Positions 2,301 to 15,300 of a DNA stretch of 64,000 nt are shown piece after piece; position 1 is the first letter of the stretch, and each line of letters begins with the position of its first letter. Position numbers and translations under genes: made by a program. The stretch spans positions 31,372,001-31,436,000 of the forward strand of contig OZ365115.1 of assembly GCA_977030845.1 (NCBI GenBank). Direction: 5' to 3'. The notes under the pieces are model-generated. The model was not told the origin of the DNA. It worked only from the letters and a program-made list of their open reading frames with translations, and searched no databases. This DNA comes from Fimbriosthenelais zetlandica (taxonomy: Eukaryota).

Positions 2301-2824
2301 ATCGGTCAAATTTTGTCTTAAATGTTTTGTTTTGTTTTATGACTTGTCCCTGTTTTTTGAGTTGTCCAACGTTCTCGTTTTCGACTCATTGGATGGGCCC
2401 GCTATAGTGTAGAGAAGGAGGAGCACCGACTTCCGGTGTCACCAAAGCAACGTTCTTACCTCCAGTACCGGAGAGTTCGCATCCCCGATTGGGAGAATTG
2501 GCTAGTTCAATACTCAGCCTCCAGATACCCTAATAGACTGCCTAAATTTAGTAGAAACATACATTATTAATCTTTAAGGAATTTATGGACCCATTCCGAA
2601 GATATAGGCCTACAGCTCGGTCCCCAGTGTTCTCCATACCCATCCCAAACTTCCCAGCACCAATCAATAGGCCTACTACTGATTCGTTTATATGCATCAG
2701 ATTTGCCTTCCGATCAATGTTGAAAAAATATTGAGCCCCTCGCCCACTCCCCTCCCCTCGGCAACTCAAACGAAAAAAAAAGCCCAAATCAACATGGGCG
2801 ACCCATGGAGCAGAAAAGTGTTCT

Positions 2825-2894
2825 GCAAGACAGGGGAAGTGAACCCCGGTCTCTGACGTTGAAGGCTAGTGTCTTACCTCTAGACTACCTGGCT
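2825..2894 (-). ncRNA. tRNA-like cassette 1 (loop CTTCAAC), degenerate B-box
   Basis: AGCCAGG TA GTCT AGAGGTA AGAC A CTAGC CTTCAAC GTCAG AGAC CGGGG TTCACTT CCCCT GTCTTGC, then TTTT at 2817-2814. Confidence 0.6.
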
Positions 2895-2970
2895 CTCAGG
2901 TCAACTGACTACACACCTTCAAATTTAGCCTGAACAGCCCATGACAAGGAGGAATCACAATGTGTATAAT

Positions 2971-3869
2971 CAGGGCTGTATTTAGGGGGGGTTACAGGGG
3001 TTACGTAACCCCCCCTGCTGATCAAAAAAAAAAATTCAAGTGTGGGAATAAGTTAAATGACTAGAAGATATGTCATCTGCCTGGTTTGTGTGTATCGAAC
3101 GCATTTCAATATGGCCTAAAGTCTAAGTGAGTCCATACAAGTCCATAGGCTACAAGTCAAAGCAAGTGTCAAAAGTTTCCTGTATTTTATTATAACTTCT
3201 CTGGTCACCTCAATCAACGTTGTATATAGGCTGCAATAGGTGTTCATGCCCTGCCTCTGTTCATTGTCAAGCTGAGTAATAAAACATGCATTTGAATTTA
3301 GCCTACGAAAGGCTTGTCCATTAGCCTACAGATGTAGCCTAAATTTCCTATAGGGCTATCGGTAGGTTACCATGGTTATTGGTAGGCCCTTAGAAGGGTT
3401 AAAAAGGATCATCATGATTCATCGGCTAAAGCTGTAAAATTAGGCCTACCTGAATTATGCTTTAGGCCTTGTAGCCTATATATAGGCCTACACCAAGATA
3501 GGGCCTACTAGCTTATTAGGCTAGTAGCCTTAGGGCTATTACTTTAGGCCCATCTTTACCGTACAATAAATGTTTCAGGGTCGTAGGCCTAAACCGTAGG
3601 CTATCGGTAGGCCCTATACAGGCCCAGACTTTAAAAAAATCCCTACTGGGATTGTTCTTTGAGAGCCTTATTCTTTGTTCCAAAATGCATCAAAATGCAC
3701 CAAATACCACCTTAAATTCCAAAATTTTCCGGGGGGGCTTGCCCCCGGACCCCCCTAGTTTTGCGTCACGCCTACGGCGCTCGCTTGTGAGTGCCTTCGG
3801 CACTCACCTTGATAATCAGTAATTGCCTAAACTGTAACCCCCCCTGAAAAATTCCTGCATACAGCCCTG
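2971..3869. mobile_element. MITE / non-autonomous DNA transposon with 11-bp TIR CAGGGCTGTAT and 6-bp TSD TATAAT
   Basis: Left end cagggctgtat (2971), right end atacagccctg (3869), subterminal GGGGGGGTTAC at both ends. TSD tataat at 2965-2970 and 3870-3875. The empty site is visible in A4 (reverse complement aatcacaatgtttaaaattattttgcccc). Confidence 0.9.
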
Positions 3870-5076
3870 TATAATTATTTTGCCCCCGGGCCCCTCCCCG
3901 GCCCCCAACCTCCACTCCAATCCCCATGTCTACCCCCAGGACTACCATCAACTCCCTCCGAAAACACCAGCCCGATTTGAAACGGCTAACATGTCAAAAT
4001 CCCTTAGAATAGCCCACTCTGTACGTACTGCCCATAGGCTCCAATGTTAAAAATTATTTAGCCCCCCGGACCCCTCCCCGGCCCCCAATCTCCACCCCAA
4101 CCCACATGTCTACGCCCAGCAGCCACCCGAACCCGCTCCCAAAAATTCAGCCCGATTCTTAGCTTCTAACCTGTCTAAATCCCTTCGATTCATCAAAAGT
4201 GTCCCGCCCATAGGCGCAATGTTAAAAGTCACTCACGATTACAGGAATGTGTGCCACAGAGCCGGTTTGCCAGTCCACTCAAATCGGCTTTTCTCTACTT
4301 GATATGTATTATTTTCACTCGAAATGACGGTTCTATATGACTTATGATCTCTACTGATAAATATTAAAAGAGCAGAGACGTAAAACGAGGACAACACCGA
4401 TTTCTGCGATATTGACAAATCGGCCTTGCGTATACCGGCCTATAATTTGGCCTTTTAAAAACCTTAACAGCGCCCTCTCACTAAAAGTCGAAAAAGTTGA
4501 ATAACTTCGTAAATAATGGGTCTAAAATTACAATTCAAACAGATTATTCTTAGTTGGGAGACCCCTCAGATGTCTATGTGGTTTTAGTTCCAATAACATT
4601 GATTTAAAATTTCGGATTTTCGAAATGGACTGAATTTCTTCATTTAGCATTGGAGTCAATGGAAGGAGGCGGCCGAGCGCCAGTGGCGACCCGAGCAGCG
4701 GCAAAAAGGTGAACTACCTTATAAGATTGGGTATTATACTTGGGATTCGGGGTATGGGGAGTGGGTCAGAATGGTACAATATTAATGGGATTTAGGGATG
4801 GGGCGGGGACTAGGCTAAATGACATTGAGCAAAATTAAAATATAGGAGGCCTACTCCTGCCGCTATCACCCGATGGATTTTTGTTTTATCTTTTTATCTT
4901 CTCTCTCTACCTTCCTCTCTCTCTCACTCTGTCTCCCTTCCACATGCCCTCTCTCTCCAGATGTGGCGCCACGCCCTCTCTCTCCAGCATTGGCAAGATC
5001 ATATACATGTACGGAGGTCTATCTGGTGAGGCGAGGAGGCGAGGCTTTTCATTCAGGTTATGCTGGCTTGCGCATA

Positions 5077-6145
5077 GTAGTTCACGTTTTCGCCGCTAGG
5101 GCATCTCGGGTCTCCACAGGCGCTTGGCCGCCTCCTTCCATTGACTCCAATGCTAAATGAAGAAATTCAGTCCATTTCGAAAATCCGAAATTTTAAATCA
5201 ATGTTATTGGAACTAAAACCACATAGACATCTGAGGGGTCTCCCAACTAAGAATAATCCGTTTGAATTGTAATTTTAGACCCATTATTTACGAAGTTATT
5301 CAACTTTTTCGACTTTTAGTGAGAGGGCGCTGTTAAGGTTTTTAAAAGGCCAAATTATAGGCCGGTATACGCAAGGCCGATTAGTCAATATCGCAGAAAT
5401 CGGTGTTGTCCTCGTTTTACGTCTCTGCTATTTTAATATTTATCAGAAGAGATCATAAGTCATATAGAACCGTCATTTCGAGTGAAAATAATACATATCA
5501 AGTAGAGAAAGGGCCGATTGGAGTGGACTGACAAACCGGCTCTGTGGAACACATTCCTGTAATCGTGAGTGATTTTTAACATTGAGCCTATGGGCGGGAC
5601 ACTTTTGATGAATTCAAGGGATTTAGATGGGTTAAAAGCATAGGATCGGGCTGAATTTTTAGGAGGGTGTTGGGATGGGTGCTGGGAGTAGACATGGGGG
5701 TTGGGGTGGAGGTTGGGACCCGGGGAGGGGTCCGGGGGGCTAAATATGTTTTAACATTGGAGCCTATAGAGTGGGCTATTCCAAAGAATTTTAACAGGTT
5801 AGCCGTTTCAAATCGGGCTGGTAGTTTTGGAGGGAGTTGTGCGGATAGACATGGTGATTGGGCTGGAGGTTGGGGCCAGGGAGGGGTCCCGGGGGCAAAA
5901 TAATTACAAATATTGTGATTAAGCCTTGTTCTGGGTGGTTCAGGCTAAATGTGTGGGGATGTAGGTCAGTCAACTGTGAGCCTGGTGGTCTAGCGGTAAG
6001 ACTCTGGCCCGGAGCGCGACAGACCGGGGTTCAATTCCCCGTCTTGTAAAACACTTTTCCTGTTCCCTGGTTCGTTGGTTGGGGGTGGGTGCTGGATATT
6101 CTTTTTCAACATTGATCGAAAGGCAGATACGATGCATTTAAGCGA
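5077..6145 (-). repeat. Arm A2 (inverted copy)
   Basis: Starts gtagttcac (5077-5085); near-identical reverse complement of A1 4300-4717 across 5110-5500, and more diverged further out. Confidence 0.9.
5979..6048 (+). ncRNA. tRNA-like cassette 2 (loop CCGGAGC)
   Basis: AGCCTGG TG GTCT AGCGGTA AGAC T CTGGC CCGGAGC GCGAC AGAC CGGGG TTCAATT CCCCG TCTTGTA; A-box TGGTCTAGCGG, B-box GGTTCAATTCC, TTTT at 6055-6058. Confidence 0.65.
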
Positions 6146-6165
6146 GTGTAACCGACAGACCTGTG

Positions 6166-6235
6166 AGCCAGGTAGTCTAGAGGTAAGACACTGGACTTGC
6201 AACACGAGAGACGGGGGTTCGATCCCCTGTCTAGT
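6166..6235 (+). ncRNA. tRNA-like cassette 3 (loop CTTGCAAC), tandem extra copy beyond A2
   Basis: AGCCAGGTAGTCTAGAGGTAAGACACTGGACTTGCAACACGAGAGACGGGGGTTCGATCCCCTGTCTAGT; B-box GGTTCGATCC, TTTTT at 6242-6246. Confidence 0.65.
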
Positions 6236-6423
6236 AAATTCTTTTTCGCTGCTGGATCACTACATATATATACGGCTTGTTAGTGTTCATTTGGGAGGGG
6301 ATCTTTTAGATAGCTGAGGCAAACGGAGCTTGGTTCCCGCCTGGTCGTACAGCTGGCGCTGTGGTGCACGGTGAGGTCGCTGAAGAAGGCTCGCAGTCTT
6401 CCTGTAAATATGTATGCCTAGTC

Positions 6424-7249
6424 ATCCATGGAGCAGAAAAATGGTTGGATCGAGTGAGGATTGAACCCTCGTCACTCGCTTGGCGGGCCAGTGTCTTACC
6501 TCTAGACTACCTGGCCGACAGGTCACTACACTGGTAGCTACGATTTAACCTTTGTAGGTACTGCCCATAGGTTCCAATGTTAAAAATTGTTTAGCCCCCC
6601 GGACCCCTCCCCGGGCCCCAACCTCCACCCCAAGCTCGATGTCTACCCCCAGGACCCATCCCAACTCACTCCCAAAAATCCAGCCCAATCCTTTGCTTCT
6701 AACCTGTCTAAATCCCTAAGATTCATTAAAAGTGTCCCGCCCATAGGCTCAATGTTAAAAATCACTCACGATTACAGGAGTGTGTGCCACAGAGCCGGTT
6801 TGCCAGTTCACTCAAATCGGCTCTTTCTATACTAATATGTGTTATTTTCACTCGAAACCACGGCAATGTATGACTTATGGCCTCTACTGATAAATACCAA
6901 AACAGCAGAGACGTAAAACGAGGATAACACCGATTTCTGCGAAGTTGACAAATCGGCCGAGCGTATACCGCCCTATAATTTGGCCTTTTAAAAACCTTAA
7001 CAGCGCCCTCTCACTAAATGTCGAAAAAGTTGAATAACTTAGTAAATAATGGGTCTAAAAATACAAACTAAACGGATTATTCTTAGTTGGGAAGTATTCT
7101 AAACAGTGGCCAGGTTTTTGAAGTGAGAAAATTGATTTAAAATTTCGGATTTTGAAAATGAACTGAATTTCTTCAATTAGCATTGGAGTCAATGGAAGGA
7201 GGCGCCTGAGCGCCAGTGGCGACCCGAGAGCGGCGGAAACGTGAACTAC
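6424..7249 (+). repeat. Arm A3 (direct copy of A1 with only one C-rich sub-repeat)
   Basis: Begins atccatggagcagaaaa (cf. A1 acccatggagcagaaaa) and ends gtgaactac at 7241-7249. Confidence 0.9.
6447..6516 (-). ncRNA. tRNA-like cassette 4 (loop CCGCCAA)
   Basis: GGCCAGG TA GTCT AGAGGTA AGAC A CTGGC CCGCCAA GCGAG TGAC GAGGG TTCAATC CTCAC TCGATCC, followed by AACCA and TTTTT (6441-6437). Confidence 0.65.
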
Positions 7250-7363
7250 TATGCGCCAGCCAGCATAGACCGAGTATCTGTCCCGGTGAGGCTATGTCGC
7301 TGGGAGGACGAGGCTTGTCATACAGGCTACAGCCAGCATAGCCTTCAGTCCTCGATGAAAGTT

Positions 7364-7554
7364 AAGGAACGCCCAGCAATGGTATAGGCCTTGTGATATG
7401 TATGGGAAATAGTGAAGGAATGTGAATAAGGGTATAAAGGCCTTGTGATATGTATGGGAAATAGTGAAGGAACGCCTAGCAACGGTATAGGCCTGATGAT
7501 ATGTATGGGAAATAGTGAAGGAACGCCCAGGCCGGGTATAGGCCTTGTGATATA
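7364..7554. repeat. 51-52 bp tandem repeat (3.7 copies) in spacer 2
   Basis: Units start at 7364, 7415, 7467 and 7518. Constant part ggtataggccttgtgatatgtatgggaaatagtgaaggaa; variable 10-11 nt segment. Confidence 0.95.
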
Positions 7555-7556
7555 CA

Positions 7557-7659
7557 GCGGCGGAACGGTGAACTACAGTACTATGATCTAGCCAAAGCTC
7601 TCTACTCCTTTCTCGGTGGGTTGGGTAGATCATAGTACCATAGTTCACCGTTCTGCCGC
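7557..7659. repeat. 34-bp-stem hairpin made from two copies of the arm inner-end motif
   Basis: gcggcggaacggtgaactacagtactatgatcta (7557-7590) pairs with tagatcatagtaccatagttcaccgttctgccgc (7626-7659) with 3 differences; 35-nt loop. Confidence 0.9.
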
Positions 7660-8741
7660 CGCAAATCTCGGGTCGCCAAAGTCGCGCTGGATTGCTCCTT
7701 CCATAGAGACCAATGCTATAGACCTCAAATTCCCTCCATTTTCAAAAATCGAAATTTTAAATTAATTTCAGTTGCACACGAAACCGATAGATACCTGGAG
7801 GTGCTTCCAACTAAGAATAATCCGTTTGAATTGTAATTTTAGACCCATTATTTACTAAGTTATTCAACTTTTTCGACATTTAGTGAGAGGGCGCTGTTAA
7901 GGTTTTTAAAAGGCCAAATTATAGGCCGGTATACGCAAGGCCGATTTGTCAACTTCGCAGAAATCAGTGTTAACTTCGCTTTACGTCTCTGTTCTTTTGG
8001 TATTTATCAGTAGAGGTCATAAGACATATATATCCGTAGTTTCGAGTGAAAATAACGCATATTAAGTAGAGAAAGAGCCGATTTGAGTGGACTGACAAAC
8101 CGGCTCTGTGGCACACATTCCTGTAATCGTGAGTGACTTTTAACATTGCGCCTATGGGCGGGACACTTTTGATGAATCGAAGGGATTTAGACAGGTTAGA
8201 AGCATAGAATCGGGCTGAATTTTTGGGAGCGGGTTCGGGTGGTTGCTGGGCGTAGACATGTGGGTTGGGGTGGAGATTGGGGGCCGGGGAGGGGTCCGGG
8301 GGGCTAAATAATTTTTAACATTGGAGCCTATGGGCAGTACGTACAGAGTGGGCTATTCTAAGGGATTTTGACATGTTAGCCGTTTCAAATCGGGCTGGTG
8401 TTTTCGGAGAGAATTGATGGTAGTCCTGGGGGTAGACATGGGGATTGGAGTGGAGGTTGGGGGCCGGGGAGGGGTCCTGGGGCAAAATAATTTTAAACAT
8501 TGTGATTTAGCCTTTGCACACGAAGGTGTGCCTTGTCCTGGGCGGTTCAGGCTAAATTTGAAAGGATGTTGTGTTCGTACCAGAGAGCCAGCTAGTCTAG
8601 AGGTAAGACACTGGCTTGGAACGTCAGAGACCGGGGTTCGTTTCCCCGTCTTGCTGGTGGGCGCTAATTTTTTTTTATCCAACTTTTATCGGAGTGAAAA
8701 TACGATGCATTTAGACGGATAGGTAGTATGGATTGGTGCTG
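7641..8741 (-). repeat. Arm A4 (inverted copy)
   Basis: Starts tagttcacc (7641); 8100-8500 is an almost exact reverse complement of A1 3876-4270; homology ends at gattggtgctg (8741). Confidence 0.9.
8586..8655 (+). ncRNA. tRNA-like cassette 5 (loop TTGGAAC), best-folding copy
   Basis: AGCCAGC TA GTCT AGAGGTA AGAC A CTGGC TTGGAAC GTCAG AGAC CGGGG TTCGTTT CCCCG TCTTGCT; D, anticodon and T stems pair fully, acceptor stem 5/7; T9 at 8668-8676. Confidence 0.65.
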
Positions 8742-11325: not shown

Positions 11326-12359
11326 CTAGTTGTGTGGCGCTCTCTTGCCTTTCATATATCCTATCCACCTCTTGGCTGTTTCTTCAAACACAGGGTCCTC
11401 CTCTACCGTGCTGATTAGGAGTAACTGGTTGATGTGTGTGGCGTGGTAGTCCCACCGTGCCAGGTTAGGAGCCACCCCTAGCGTCACATGACGTAAATCA
11501 TAGATGGACCCAGAACCGGTATCAAAGAGAGGTAGAAGAGCTTTGAGTGACTGGATACCAGTTTGATAGAGCTTCTCCGCGTGCTCCCTCTCCTCCACGG
11601 GAGCTATTGTCTTTAAATCATACAAACCGATGAGTGAATATATGAATCCGTTTAAAACAAAACAACTGGGTGTCGTTGGGTACTCTTCGTACCACTGGTA
11701 TTTGTCCATGAACCGTGCCTGCACACCACCGCTAGTACTCAATACATCAAATAAATGCGTGGCTTTTAAAGCTGACGTTAAATATTTTTTGTTTCTAGTC
11801 CTTAAGTAAGCTCTGACTAAGAGAGACATGGCTTGTCCTTGGGCCATGGCCGAGTACCAGCCAGGGGGTAATTGAAGCACCCCGTTGGCCAGTTTACGAG
11901 TCACCTGTATGGGCCAGCCACCCTGGCTATCCTGGTTCAACACCAGCCAGTTGGCGGCGTAATAAAACTGTGGAAGATGGGCGCTAGAGCAGAGGGTGAT
12001 GTTATCCACCCAGCCCCGGCCACGAAAGTTCACACTGATTAACCGGTTCAATACAAGCTTCTTGGATTTCTTGGGCTTGTTAGATTTGAGCATGATGCCC
12101 TTGTGGAAGTCTATATTGATGTCCCGGGTGATGTGGGTCCATCGATGGCGGTCACCAATACCGTAATAAATGTCATAGCCGGACACCTCCAACAGAGTCT
12201 GGCTGCACACATAGTGAATGTAGTACAAGGGAGCTCCCTTCCCTTTGGGTTCTATCACAACTGTTATGGAACCGTTGGTAACAAACTTGAAGTCAAATGA
12301 GAGGAAAAAACTTTTGCTAGAGTCTATCCGCAATCCCACTCCAGGGTTAGATAAAGTGT
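11326..12359 (-). CDS. GLCE: GLCE last coding exon (beta-sandwich plus catalytic alpha/alpha barrel)
   Basis: Acceptor ctttttccttttcag|ac; ends KGKRAPHN*. The first ~62 residues of the 406-aa ORF-track entry are intron. Confidence 0.97.
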
Positions 12360-15300
12360 CTGAAAAGGAAAAAGAAAGAATTCTAAGTAATGAGGCAACA
12401 GAGCTATTTCTTTGAGAATCTTCCGCATTATTAATGGAAAATAGTTTCAAATTACACACAAATGATTGTTGAAAGAGAATATTAACCAAAACCAGAAGCA
12501 CCAACTTTATGTGAATATTTTCAAATAATAAGTAGTTTTTGTTCACAATTTTCTACAGACATTAGATGTTTTAATGATTGATATGTAGGTAACCCACCTC
12601 TAGTGTTGAACTCAATGACCCGCGTGCCCCGTATAGGGTCTATATCATTATCTAGTGACGTCTCATCGTCGGGGAGGATCCAGCGACTCGTCAAGTCATC
12701 CTCAGCGTCCTCTAGCACCTTCCTGGTAGGAGGCTTGGTGGCCAGGTACTTACTGTAGTGACTCAGCCCATACTGAGCTATCTGTATAGGGTAGAAGTAA
12801 CCCTGAGGTCCCCACTGAGTAGAGATGGGTACTCCTAGAAGACATGAGCAAAATCAGAGGGTTAATATGCAACTCAATGAGGGCTGAAGTGAGTACCTGA
12901 AGTTGTGTGCCTCGAGAAGTGCATCTTGGGCACGAGTGACACTCACATAAGGCAAATGCAAATGATGGCACACAAATCAAATTGGTTCGTTATTGGTATG
13001 ATCAAATTTCTGATCAGAAGTTTCCATTGTAAGCAATTTCAAGGCTTTGCAATTGTCAATTTCCAGCAATCCCTTGTCCCTTGCGACAATCACACATGGT
13101 GGAGAACCCATATAAATAACTGAGAACCCATACAAATAAATGCAACATTACTGAACGCTAGTGCAATCCGCATCAGCCTGTTCCATGCCAAAACTGCACA
13201 GATTTTGTAGAATAGTATGTGCTCATGCCATGGTAAAATAGACGTATTAGAAGGAGGATATTGATATTTAGATGGACGCTGGACTCACCTTCTATACCAC
13301 TGATACATTTCACTCGATCCCTCACTTCCACATTATAATGCTCAAATGACATGAAGATACCCTCTGGAGTGTAGCGCCCCTGGGGGTTGTACACCTGAGA
13401 GTAGCTATGTTTCCACTCAAACCGTTCATAGCCATCATACTCTGTAAACTTGCCATACACCTGCAATCAAAAACACTCCATTTTAACGAGATTCACATTA
13501 CATTTTTAATATTAAAACGACAGGTTGATAAATTTTGAACCTCTTCTTTGAAATGTTGTTGTAATCAGACTAATTACTATAAATGACGTTATATTAATAT
13601 TTTTCTCATTAATTTAGTTGTTATTTTGGAAATCGCAATGACACACATAATAACCTATCCATAAATGTTACATATTCTGAACCTGTAATAAACAACTCGG
13701 ACCAAATCTATTCCACAACGGAATAAATAATACAGCTGAAGAGATATTTTTGGCGCTCGGGAGCCACAGTATCGTTTCAGTGACAATGCAATCATGGTGG
13801 GCGAAAGCATTCATGGACAGACAGAGATTTGATTTGTACATGGCCAATGGTGGGGAAGCATTTCTAATTCATGCCCTATCTAGGATTACTACTATGTATA
13901 TATATGCACCTGGGGCAAATGGCTCATCTAATGCTTACATAGACCGCTTCTCATTTGTCACACAGACATACAGAGTAATGTGATATGGATGCTATATGGA
14001 TGCCTGCCAGCAAACCAACCTTACAACAGAAGGCGGAAGTGTCCGCACCTCATATTCTCACAATTGTTTTATGATGGACTTCCACTTAACGACCACTTAA
14101 TTCACTTATACGACCATATCATACCAAATGGTGGTCAGAACCATTTTCGTCTAGCGATTTCATTCTCTAGAGCTGCAAGCATTGAAATCCCAAACTGAAT
14201 TGGCCTATAATAGGTTCTACTACAAGTGCAGCAAGAAAATTTCAATGAAACATTGTAAGTATCATTGTATTTAACTAAATGTCAGTTCAATGGCGGATAA
14301 TAAATCAACTAAAATCAATTCCAGAAGCTAATTCGGTCAACGAGGGTTAAGTACCGAGCTGATAAGAACAGTTAAGCTAACTCCTATGTTCTAAAAGGTA
14401 CAGAGAGGCCTGTCGCCCCTGTCGGTTGAACTTTGGTCCAGACAATCCCAGCAGCACACCCCAGTCCTGAGATAAGACTTGTCTGTTAGAGATAAGCAGG
14501 CTCAAACCTCTCCCGTGCGACCACTGCTAACACTATGCCTGTCAATGTAGCGGGCAGGCCAGCATTAGACTGGGCGACAGCTGGCACTATTTTTTTACCG
14601 CCCCAAAACATCCAGTCAACTTCCCTTCCAGCTGCTCTGGCGTAATGATTTGAATCCACTGTGGATTGATTCTGAAAGGCAGTATTTTCCTACCGACAGG
14701 AAAGAGATTTGACATTTGATAAGAGCCTCAATTTTTCAGACATCCTTTCATACCCTCTTCTAATGGTGGTTGATTTCCCTGAAAGCATTGGTGGGCTCGT
14801 GGCATTCAGCATGCACAGAGGGAATCTCTAAACTGATCGGTAAAAAATCTTTCCTACAACGAATCAGCCCTTCAACCACAACTACAACATTTTTGCTACA
14901 ACTTTCAACATTTTTGCTATTTTGCAATTCAATGAAATATAAATAAAGGGAACCTTTCACTCTTGAAATCTTTCAGTTCTGTTACTACCTAAACTAGCAA
15001 CAACCGAAGGGAGAACGAACGTTCATATTCAAAACCATGAACCTTTGGATTTTATTTCATATCTGCCCTAAAAAGATTTCAAAATTGATTTACTACTCTT
15101 TGTGAGCGGGAACAGGGCTATAGCCATGGAGAACGGGATTTCATTCTCCATGGGTATGGAGAATGATGGCAATATCAGATATCAAATAAATCACCGTATA
15201 TATTGTAATATACTCACCTCAAAATACTTGTTAATGAAGGTGAATGGGACGTAGACCTCATTGCCCTCGCGTCTACAGGTGACGGTATATTCACCATTGA

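What the first reader, a model, noticed from the sequence alone, without database searches (positions are those of the whole stretch)
2825..8655. Five tRNA-like cassettes with conserved promoter, D and T arms and terminator but a hypervariable anticodon loop
Seen: the D-arm GTCT-AG(A/C)GGTA-AGAC is the same in all five copies, the T-arm/B-box is largely kept (copy 4 has GAGG/CCTC where others have GGGG/CCCC, a compensatory-looking change), and each is followed within ~20 nt by T4-T9. The anticodon-loop position differs in every copy: CTTCAAC (TCA), CCGGAGC (GGA), CTTGCAAC (TGC or GCA), CCGCCAA (GCC), TTGGAAC (GGA). Acceptor stems pair poorly (best 5/7). Known: A-box plus B-box plus oligo-T defines a type 2 Pol III unit; the head resembles tRNA-Glu/Asp (TGGTCTAGCGG.., GAGACCGGGGTTCGATTCCCCG). 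Inference: ~85-100 nt Pol III RNAs that are not charged tRNAs, with variation concentrated in one loop like a specificity or guide region. Alternatively they are TFIIIC-binding sites only.
Basis: partly seen in the sequence, partly recalled or inferred. Interest (0 to 1): 0.8.

Follow-up and report, generated by a model that had tools for sequence, protein, structure and literature searches.

The report
tRNA-like tips of foldback repeats
The five tRNA-like cassettes are real, but they are the tRNA-derived end modules of a roughly 1,000-copy foldback repeat family in an annelid-like animal genome, and their "hypervariable" anticodon loop is ordinary drift of an unconstrained segment, not a guide region.

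Summary
All five cassettes exist as described (Rfam tRNA 49, 35, 31, 25 bits; c2 not called). They are not a local gene family. A 17-mer of the D arm occurs 466 times in this 447-Mb genome (reversed control 0), which implies about 1,000 copies. About 80% of sampled copies sit in the same place, at the outer end of ~1-kb inverted arms of a foldback repeat with more than 1,400 arm candidates. The window holds two such elements side by side plus one extra module (c3).

Across 123 copies the consensus loop CTGGAAC is kept in 24, about what ~80% per-site conservation predicts. In independent sister pairs the loop changes at about the flank rate. The A box, and less clearly the B box and the T-run, change 2-3 times more slowly. 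The cloverleaf shows no covariation above shuffles, and the acceptor helix pairs in only 57% of cells. The matching interval of a related species has no cassette, arm or long inverted repeat.

Verdict: a tRNA-derived Pol III-type module carried by a transposable-element family. The guide-RNA reading is not supported. Whether the promoter is still used is open, because no RNA runs were listed. Other first-stage notes of this scan describe the same architecture elsewhere in this genome.

The parts
2827..2894 (-). c1: tRNA-like module at the left tip of foldback element A, facing outward; T4 at 2814-2817(-)
   Evidence: Rfam tRNA 35 bits; alignments A1 and A2
2546..2826 (-). Outward tail of c1: post sequence, T-run, G-rich tail and a further AACATTG-headed module. 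Homology to other copies stops at about 2546.
   Evidence: BLAST against fetched loci; three loci end at query position 281
2895..2970 (-). Conserved pre-head of the tRNA module of c1 (module head AACATTGTGATT...GGTTCAGGCTAAAT)
   Evidence: (I9, I11)
2971..3869 (.). Unrelated nested MITE inside A's left arm: TIR CAGGGCTGTAT, 6-bp TSD TATAAT at 2965-2970 and 3870-3875
   Evidence: read directly; the arm consensus is uninterrupted here in other copies
3870..4695 (-). Element A left arm (subrepeat 2, subrepeat 1, inner segment)
   Evidence: inverted repeats I1, I2, I8; piece map
4696..5104 (.). Element A loop
5105..5977 (+). Element A right arm plus pre-head
5978..6046 (+). c2: tRNA-like module at the right tip of A; T4 at 6055-6058. 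No Rfam tRNA call, only an 18-nt T-arm match (6024-6041).
6166..6233 (+). c3: extra tRNA-like module behind an AACATTG-headed module instead of an arm; 8-nt loop; T5 at 6242-6246
   Evidence: Rfam 24.9 bits, below gathering score; context
6236..6445 (.). Conserved spacer between the converging pair c3/c4; recurs at 74-81% in L031, L045/L053 and L049
6446..6516 (-). c4: tRNA-like module at the left tip of element B; T5 at 6437-6441(-)
   Evidence: Rfam 31.2 bits
6517..7229 (-). Element B left arm
   Evidence: I4, I5, I10
7230..7726 (.). Element B loop with a 51-nt minisatellite (7360-7574)
   Evidence: D6, I21
7727..8585 (+). Element B right arm plus pre-head
8586..8656 (+). c5: tRNA-like module at the right tip of B, the best-preserved copy; T9 at 8668-8676
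   Evidence: Rfam 49 bits; ARAGORN tRNA-Ser(gga)

Best explanation
The five cassettes are copies of one tRNA-derived module. The module comprises about 70 nt of conserved pre-head, a 71-75-nt tRNA-like body, a T-run and a short tail. It forms the outer end of the ~1-kb arms of a high-copy, non-autonomous foldback (long inverted repeat) element family. The window holds two such elements side by side, A with c1/c2 and B with c4/c5, each with one outward-facing module per tip, plus one extra module (c3) in the junction. Shown: family membership, architecture, copy number, absence of a working acceptor stem, absence of covariation, and absence from the matching interval of a related species. Inferred: the module descends from a tRNA-derived Pol III unit whose A box, and probably B box and terminator, are still under some constraint, through Pol III transcription and/or TFIIIC binding that matters to the element or the host. 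The anticodon loop, acceptor arms and spacer are free to drift. Drift of a 7-nt unconstrained segment at about 20% per-site divergence makes every copy look different. How the element moves is not resolved.
For: Dispersed family: 931 first-look candidates for the module, 1412 and 1443 for the arms, and 466 exact D-arm 17-mers against 0 in the control. About 45% of unbiased copies carry that 17-mer, giving about 1,000 copies. Same order of parts in at least 15 loci on several chromosomes: tRNA-like(-), pre-head, sub2, sub1, inner, loop, inner, sub1, sub2, pre-head, tRNA-like(+). 106/129 copies have the module head upstream and at least 94/129 the arm. Loop: 50 variants in 123 copies, with the consensus in 24, where 0.8^7 predicts about 26. 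Sister-pair difference rates in two samples: A box 0.052 and 0.059, B box 0.069 and 0.108, T-run 0.084 and 0.075, loop 0.159 and 0.271, flanks about 0.12 and 0.17. A box against flanks gives OR 0.3-0.4, p about 1e-4. No covariation: 218/500 and 148/500 shuffles reach the observed values. Terminator present in 113/123 copies. Rfam scores are 25-44 bits in 20 arm-anchored loci, with 11 of 18 above the gathering score. The syntenic interval of a related species lacks it.
Against: No target-site duplication or sharp terminus was found; outward homology ends raggedly. No autonomous copy or transposase was seen; all ORFs in 80 loci are 202 aa or shorter. Mobility as a DNA transposon is therefore inferred only from dispersal. 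Slow change is not exclusive to Pol III parts: the pre-head (0.065-0.10) and the inner arms are equally or more conserved, so the box signal could reflect element-level sequence requirements unrelated to Pol III. The B-box signal is only marginal (p 0.02-0.16). Copy sets are small (10-18 independent pairs) and were found by similarity, which may slightly favour conserved ends. No RNA data exist to show transcription.
Confidence: 0.78

Rival explanations
1. Passive passenger. An old tRNA-derived SINE-like unit of about 120 nt (GACCTGTG + tRNA-like body + CATTTTTCTGCTCC..GATCGCTACA) was once captured near the arm tip and amplified with its carrier. It has no present function, and the apparent box conservation is mutational, ascertainment or alignment noise.
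For: The same ~120-nt module with the same edges sits in a second repeat family with unrelated upstream sequence (L044, L046, L047, L049). Solo copies begin exactly at the tRNA-like 5' end. There is no covariation. The pre-head and inner arms are equally conserved without being Pol III parts.
Against: The A box is 2.5-3.5 times slower than the rest of the same well-aligned core in samples not chosen on the D arm (p 7e-4 and 3e-5). The T-run is kept in 92% of copies against 12-14% in controls. CpG sites are not faster here (0.097 against 0.104), so a mutational explanation is not obvious.
Confidence: 0.25
2. TFIIIC-binding sites only. The boxes recruit TFIIIC, with or without Pol III, and act as boundary or chromatin-organising sites at both tips of each element. 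No stable RNA matters.
For: Conservation is at the sequence level of the A box and partly the B box, not of RNA pairing. The units face outward at both tips of the element.
Against: The terminator T-run directly after the unit is also kept, which a binding site alone would not need. Only 64% of copies have a strict B box, which is the main TFIIIC contact. No occupancy data exist.
Confidence: 0.12
3. One reading: a family of about 85-100-nt Pol III RNAs that are not tRNAs and use a diversified anticodon loop as a guide or specificity region.
For: Pol III layout is kept in more than 90% of copies. Anticodon positions 34 and 35 are the most variable columns of the core: consensus kept in 0.79 and 0.58 of all copies, 0.67 and 0.50 of arm-anchored copies. 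The loop is mildly faster than the rest of the core (OR 1.8-2.3, p 0.008-0.04).
Against: The loop is not faster than the flanks (p 0.05-0.27). Loop diversity equals what uniform ~20% divergence gives. The anticodon stem that would present the loop is itself decaying: pair 42-56 is unpaired in 83/127 copies, and there is no compensatory change. About 1,000 copies are tied to a repeat. It is absent from the syntenic site in a relative.
Confidence: 0.04
4. A cluster of true tRNA genes or recent tRNA pseudogenes made by local duplication.
For: ARAGORN and Rfam call c5 a tRNA.
Against: c5 would be a tRNA-Ser without the long variable arm and has a 5/7 acceptor stem. Even the family consensus lacks a proper acceptor stem. 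Identical flanks occur at hundreds of dispersed loci.
Confidence: 0.02

Closest known systems
tRNA-derived SINEs (SINE2/tRNA class)
   Same: A tRNA-related segment with internal A and B boxes, hundreds to thousands of dispersed copies, a degenerate acceptor stem, and boxes better kept than the region between them.
   Different: The tRNA-like part is not the 5' head of the repeat: about 1 kb of conserved arm precedes it. A Pol III terminator follows within about 7 nt instead of a body and an A-rich or LINE-derived tail. Copies come as inverted pairs around a loop. Comparison with Repbase, Dfam or SINEBase was not possible with these tools.
Foldback / long-TIR elements (Drosophila FB, sea-urchin TU, Galileo-type; from my own knowledge)
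   Same: About 1-kb inverted arms built of diverged ~180-230-nt tandem modules around a variable loop. Many non-autonomous copies, ragged arm ends, and clustering into arrays.
   Different: Each arm tip carries a complete outward-facing tRNA-like Pol III unit. No TSD, terminal motif or transposase was found here, so superfamily membership is open.
Pol III-type tRNA-derived satellite or dispersed repeats (Hy/Pol III of European salamanders, Xenopus satellite 1; listed in Table 1 of PMC6947457)
   Same: SINE-like, Pol III-promoter-bearing units that multiply as part of tandem or structured repeats rather than as classic SINEs. The second family here (L044, L047) is a 1336-nt tandem array.
   Different: A different lineage and sequence, an inverted rather than tandem main arrangement, and no transcription data.
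TFIIIC-only (ETC-like) sites and tRNA-gene or SINE insulators (from my own knowledge)
   Same: B-box-containing sites without a functional tRNA product, possibly acting at the DNA level.
   Different: Here the A box is the best conserved part and a terminator is kept. Copy number and repeat context point to a mobile element.

Membership tests
Functional tRNA gene | Cloverleaf with a 7-bp acceptor stem | tested here: not met
   The acceptor helix pairs in 56.7% of cells over 127 copies. The best window copy has 5/7. The family consensus has 5/7 including 2 wobbles.
Functional tRNA gene | Covariance-model score typical of tRNAs, and identity elements that fit the anticodon | tested here: not met
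   Window copies score 49, 35, 31 and 25 bits, with no tRNA hit for c2. In 20 other loci scores are 25-44 bits, 11 of 18 above the gathering score of 29. c5 reads as Ser(GGA) but has a 4-nt variable region.
Functional structured RNA of any kind | Compensatory changes that keep stems paired | tested here: not met
   Covariation score 0.127 against a shuffled mean of 0.124 (148/500 shuffles reach it). Paired cells 74.8% against 74.7%.
Type-2 Pol III transcription unit | A box, B box at tRNA spacing, and an oligo-T terminator downstream | tested here: met
   A-box-like motif in 109/123 copies, strict B box in 79/123, and T>=4 within 45 nt in 113/123 (median 7 nt) against 17 and 15 in controls. 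T4 occurs inside the body in only 8/123. This is a sequence-level test only.
Type-2 Pol III transcription unit | Actual transcription by Pol III, or TFIIIC occupancy | not testable with these tools
   No sequencing run was listed for this genome.
tRNA-derived SINE | tRNA-related head at the 5' end of the repeat unit | tested here: not met
   Conservation continues 150 nt to about 1 kb upstream in 82% of copies. A minority of solo copies do start at the tRNA-like 5' end.
tRNA-derived SINE | Body plus an A-rich, simple-repeat or LINE-derived 3' tail, flanked by TSDs | tested here: inconclusive
   A T-run follows within about 7 nt, then a ~35-60-nt shared tail and an AT-rich variable stretch. No TSD was found.
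Foldback / long-TIR DNA element | Long inverted arms with internal subrepeats around a loop, in many dispersed copies | tested here: met
   Arms of about 0.7-1 kb at 86-98% complementarity, 180-nt subrepeats, the same architecture in at least 15 loci, and more than 1,400 arm candidates.
Foldback / long-TIR DNA element | Defined termini with target-site duplications; a transposase in autonomous copies | tested here: inconclusive
   Ragged outer ends and no TSD. No ORF above 202 aa in 80 loci.

The most novel reading that the evidence does not exclude
A foldback-type mobile element family needs, or exploits, a working outward-facing Pol III/TFIIIC unit at each tip. Possible roles are a chromatin boundary, a targeting or replication aid, or a source of a tRNA-like RNA used in its propagation. 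This would explain why the tRNA-like tips and the loop's inner-end motif are the parts shared between two otherwise different repeat families, and why the A box (and more weakly the B box and terminator) evolves 2-3 times more slowly than neighbouring sites.
Probability: 0.2. Interest if true: 0.6.

Novelty: new variant of a known kind. Interest (0 to 1): 0.3.

Why it matters
For annotation, about 1,000 tRNA-like hits in this genome, some passing Rfam's threshold and one called tRNA-Ser by ARAGORN, are repeat modules and not tRNA genes. For biology, the guide-RNA idea can be set aside. What remains is a foldback repeat whose tips keep a Pol III-type promoter and terminator better than neighbouring sequence. 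If that constraint is real, it would be an unusual link between a DNA-level inverted-repeat element and the Pol III/TFIIIC machinery. It would be testable with small-RNA sequencing or ChIP in this lophotrochozoan.

Tried and rejected
- **Expression:** two run searches, on the array and on the neighbouring GLCE exon, listed no run.
- **Termini and TSDs:** left and right outward flanks of 21 complete elements share little beyond the tRNA-like end, and no TSD emerged. Pairwise post-region similarity breaks at about 35 and 65-75 nt, which are an AT-rich indel-prone stretch and a T-run rather than termini. Comparison with near-identical inner-arm relatives on the same chromosome did not help, because their outer arms are only 83% alike.
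- **Autonomous copy:** no ORF above 202 aa in any fetched locus, so no Pfam search was made on them.
- **More copies:** Statistics therefore rest on 123-127 copies.
- **Literature:** two full-text searches found no description of foldback elements with tRNA-like tips. This is not proof of absence.
- **Known-SINE identity:** no Repbase, Dfam or SINEBase is available, and Rfam returned only tRNA.
- **CpG decay as the cause of loop variation:** rejected, because CpG sites are not faster in sister pairs.
- **First semi-global alignment:** its gap settings were wrong, so it was discarded and redone.
Full report
**Observation.**
- Coordinates: c1 2827-2894(-), c2 5978-6046(+), c3 6166-6233(+), c4 6446-6516(-), c5 8586-8656(+).
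- Rfam's tRNA model scores c5 at 49 bits, c1 at 35, c4 at 31.2 (gathering score 29) and c3 at 24.9. c2 gets only a T-arm match. ARAGORN calls c5 alone, as tRNA-Ser(gga).
- The D arm, the T arm, the five loop sequences and the T4-T9 runs just downstream all read as described.
- The best acceptor stem is 5/7.

**What they belong to.**
- A 196-nt query around c5 found 931 first-look candidates in the window's own 447-Mb genome. The scored ones all cover the same 125 nt: 56 nt upstream plus the tRNA-like body.
- The D-arm 17-mer TAGTCTAGAGGTAAGAC occurs 466 times, against 0 for the reversed control. About 45% of copies not chosen on that word carry it, which implies about 1,000 copies.
- Conservation does not stop at the cassette. 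It runs at least 150 nt upstream into a G-rich 180-nt subrepeat and about 60-80 nt downstream.
- Mapping pieces of element B onto 20 further loci gave the same order again and again: tRNA-like(-), pre-head, subrepeat 2, subrepeat 1, inner segment, loop, then the mirror image ending in tRNA-like(+). The two tips are about 2 kb apart.
- The inner arm alone has 1412 and 1443 first-look candidates, with best hits at 90-98% identity.
- Of 129 copies with upstream context, 106 have the module head and at least 94 the arm. Eleven belong to a second family that carries the same module behind different sequence. A few are solo inverted partners.
- The window therefore holds two foldback elements side by side, A (c1...c2) and B (c4...c5), with an extra module c3 in the junction. 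An unrelated MITE is nested in A's left arm at 2971-3869, with TSD TATAAT.
- The host is a lophotrochozoan. The neighbouring heparan-sulfate C5-epimerase exon is closest, among named proteins, to those of the annelids Owenia and Capitella.

**Is the loop hypervariable?**
- In 123 non-redundant copies, conservation against the family consensus is:

| Segment | Fraction matching consensus |
|---|---|
| D arm | 0.97 |
| T loop | 0.92 |
| Anticodon stems | 0.84-0.88 |
| Anticodon loop | 0.80 |
| 3' acceptor strand | 0.66 |
| Upstream flank | 0.75 |
| Downstream flank | 0.67 |

- A set of 35 arm ends, taken by position and so not selected on the cassette, gives the same ranking: 0.87-0.92, 0.84, 0.82-0.86, 0.75, 0.65, 0.79 and 0.70.
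- There are 50 loop variants. The consensus CTGGAAC is kept in 24 of 123 copies, and 0.8^7 predicts about 26.
- I then compared independent nearest-neighbour pairs, chosen on flank similarity and excluding loci fetched through the D-arm word:

| Segment | Differences per site (two samples) |
|---|---|
| A box | 0.052, 0.059 |
| B box | 0.069, 0.108 |
| T-run | 0.084, 0.075 |
| Pre-head | 0.065, 0.102 |
| Anticodon loop | 0.159, 0.271 |
| Spacer before cassette | 0.159, 0.240 |
| Trailer | 0.157, 0.205 |

- The A box is slower than the flanks (OR 0.3-0.4, p about 1e-4). The B box is only marginally slower (p 0.02-0.07). The loop is not distinguishable from the flanks (OR 1.3-1.8, p 0.27 and 0.05).
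- CpG sites are not faster.
- The real signal is therefore slow boxes on a drifting background, not a fast loop. Anticodon positions 34 and 35 are the most variable columns of the core, but equally variable columns occur in the acceptor strand and the flanks.

**RNA structure.**
- The cloverleaf imposed on 127 copies pairs in 74.8% of cells, far above slid controls (36-50%). It equals the shuffled expectation of 74.7%, with 218/500 shuffles at least as high. The covariation score is 0.127 against 0.124.
- The acceptor helix pairs in 56.7% of cells. The middle anticodon-stem pair is unpaired in 83 of 127 copies.
- The fold is inherited from a tRNA ancestor and is eroding. What is kept is DNA sequence at the promoter boxes.

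**Pol III layout.** An A-box-like motif is present in 109/123 copies and a strict B box in 79/123. T>=4 lies within 45 nt, at a median of 7 nt, in 113/123 copies, against 17 and 15 in control windows. Only 8 copies have T4 inside the body.

**Conservation across species.** Two haplotigs of a related species carry the same epimerase exon (77% nt identity) and the same neighbouring exons. The interval between them is 7.8 kb there and 10.2 kb here. It contains no hit to any arm piece, no tRNA-like match at E<=1 and no long inverted repeat. The array is a lineage-specific insertion, not a conserved locus.

**Mechanism.**
- Shown: the cassettes are repeat modules, cannot be standard tRNAs, and show no sign of selection on RNA pairing or of loop diversification.
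- Inferred: they descend from a tRNA-derived Pol III unit, and its A box, probably with the B box and terminator, remains under some constraint. Either Pol III transcription or TFIIIC binding matters for the element's spread or for the host, or these bases double as element-level recognition sequences.
- Caution: the pre-head and inner arms are just as conserved without being Pol III parts.
- Not resolved: how the element moves. Outer ends are ragged, no TSD was found and no coding copy was seen.
- Elements cluster into alternating inverted arrays, and arm identity falls from the centre outwards (98%, 90%, 74% in A). This suggests gene conversion or palindrome-type amplification in addition to transposition.

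**Comparison and novelty.**
- It works like the tRNA-related head of a SINE but fails the SINE membership test, because it is not the 5' head of the unit and has no tail.
- It meets the structural definition of a foldback element, but TSD and transposase are untested.
- Pol III-type tRNA-derived satellites (Hy/Pol III, Xenopus satellite 1; PMC6947457) are the nearest functional analogues.
- Two literature searches found no foldback element with tRNA-like tips. No repeat database could be consulted.
- I rate it a new variant of known kinds, of modest interest.
- Other first-stage notes of this scan report the same architecture at other places in this genome.

Noticed in passing
window 2971-3869: An 899-nt MITE nested in element A's left arm: 11-nt perfect TIR CAGGGCTGTAT, G7TTACAG subterminal motif, 6-bp TSD TATAAT (2965-2970 and 3870-3875). 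It is rich in TAGGCCTA motifs.
   Followed up: partly
window 3870-4695 / 5105-5930 / 6550-7229 / 7727-8514: Left-right arm identity falls from the centre outwards within each element (A: 98%, 90%, 74%; B: 92%, 89%, 79%). A's left outer arm is 98% identical to B's right outer arm. This mosaic suggests gene conversion between and within palindromes.
   Followed up: partly
L044:791-2377, L047:791-2386, L046, L049, L013: A second repeat family carries the same ~120-nt tRNA-like module behind a different upstream sequence. It occurs as converging pairs about 115 nt apart in 1336-nt tandem arrays, and shares the foldback family's loop inner-end motif.
   Followed up: partly
L013:2307-2381, L077:704-779, L054:2583-2657, L052:2572-2646, L048:791-865: Solo inverted partner copies whose homology to the family begins exactly at the tRNA-like 5' end, with unrelated sequence upstream.
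   Followed up: no
L016:1485 vs L023:1485: L016 is a 95.8% duplicate of L023 over 1.6 kb that is cut off exactly at the module head (g)AACATT(a)TG. All arm modules start with a T-run plus AACATTG and end G-rich plus TAAATAA, so module heads may be breakpoints or recombination sites.
   Followed up: no
window 7360-7574: A 51-nt minisatellite (4 units) in the loop of element B. Similar units occur in loops at L036, L040 and L043.
   Followed up: no
window 11326-12546 (-): A large exon of a heparan-sulfate D-glucuronyl C5-epimerase (Pfam C5-epim_C, Glce_b_sandwich). The best named relatives are annelid (Owenia, Capitella, 63%).
   Followed up: yes
G000 C25 (4.1-4.6 Mb, 10.55 Mb, 32.1-32.9 Mb): Inner arms 92-98% identical to element A's cluster on the window's own chromosome, while their outer arms are only about 83% alike where read (L021, L024). 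This points to young local copies with mosaic tips.
   Followed up: partly
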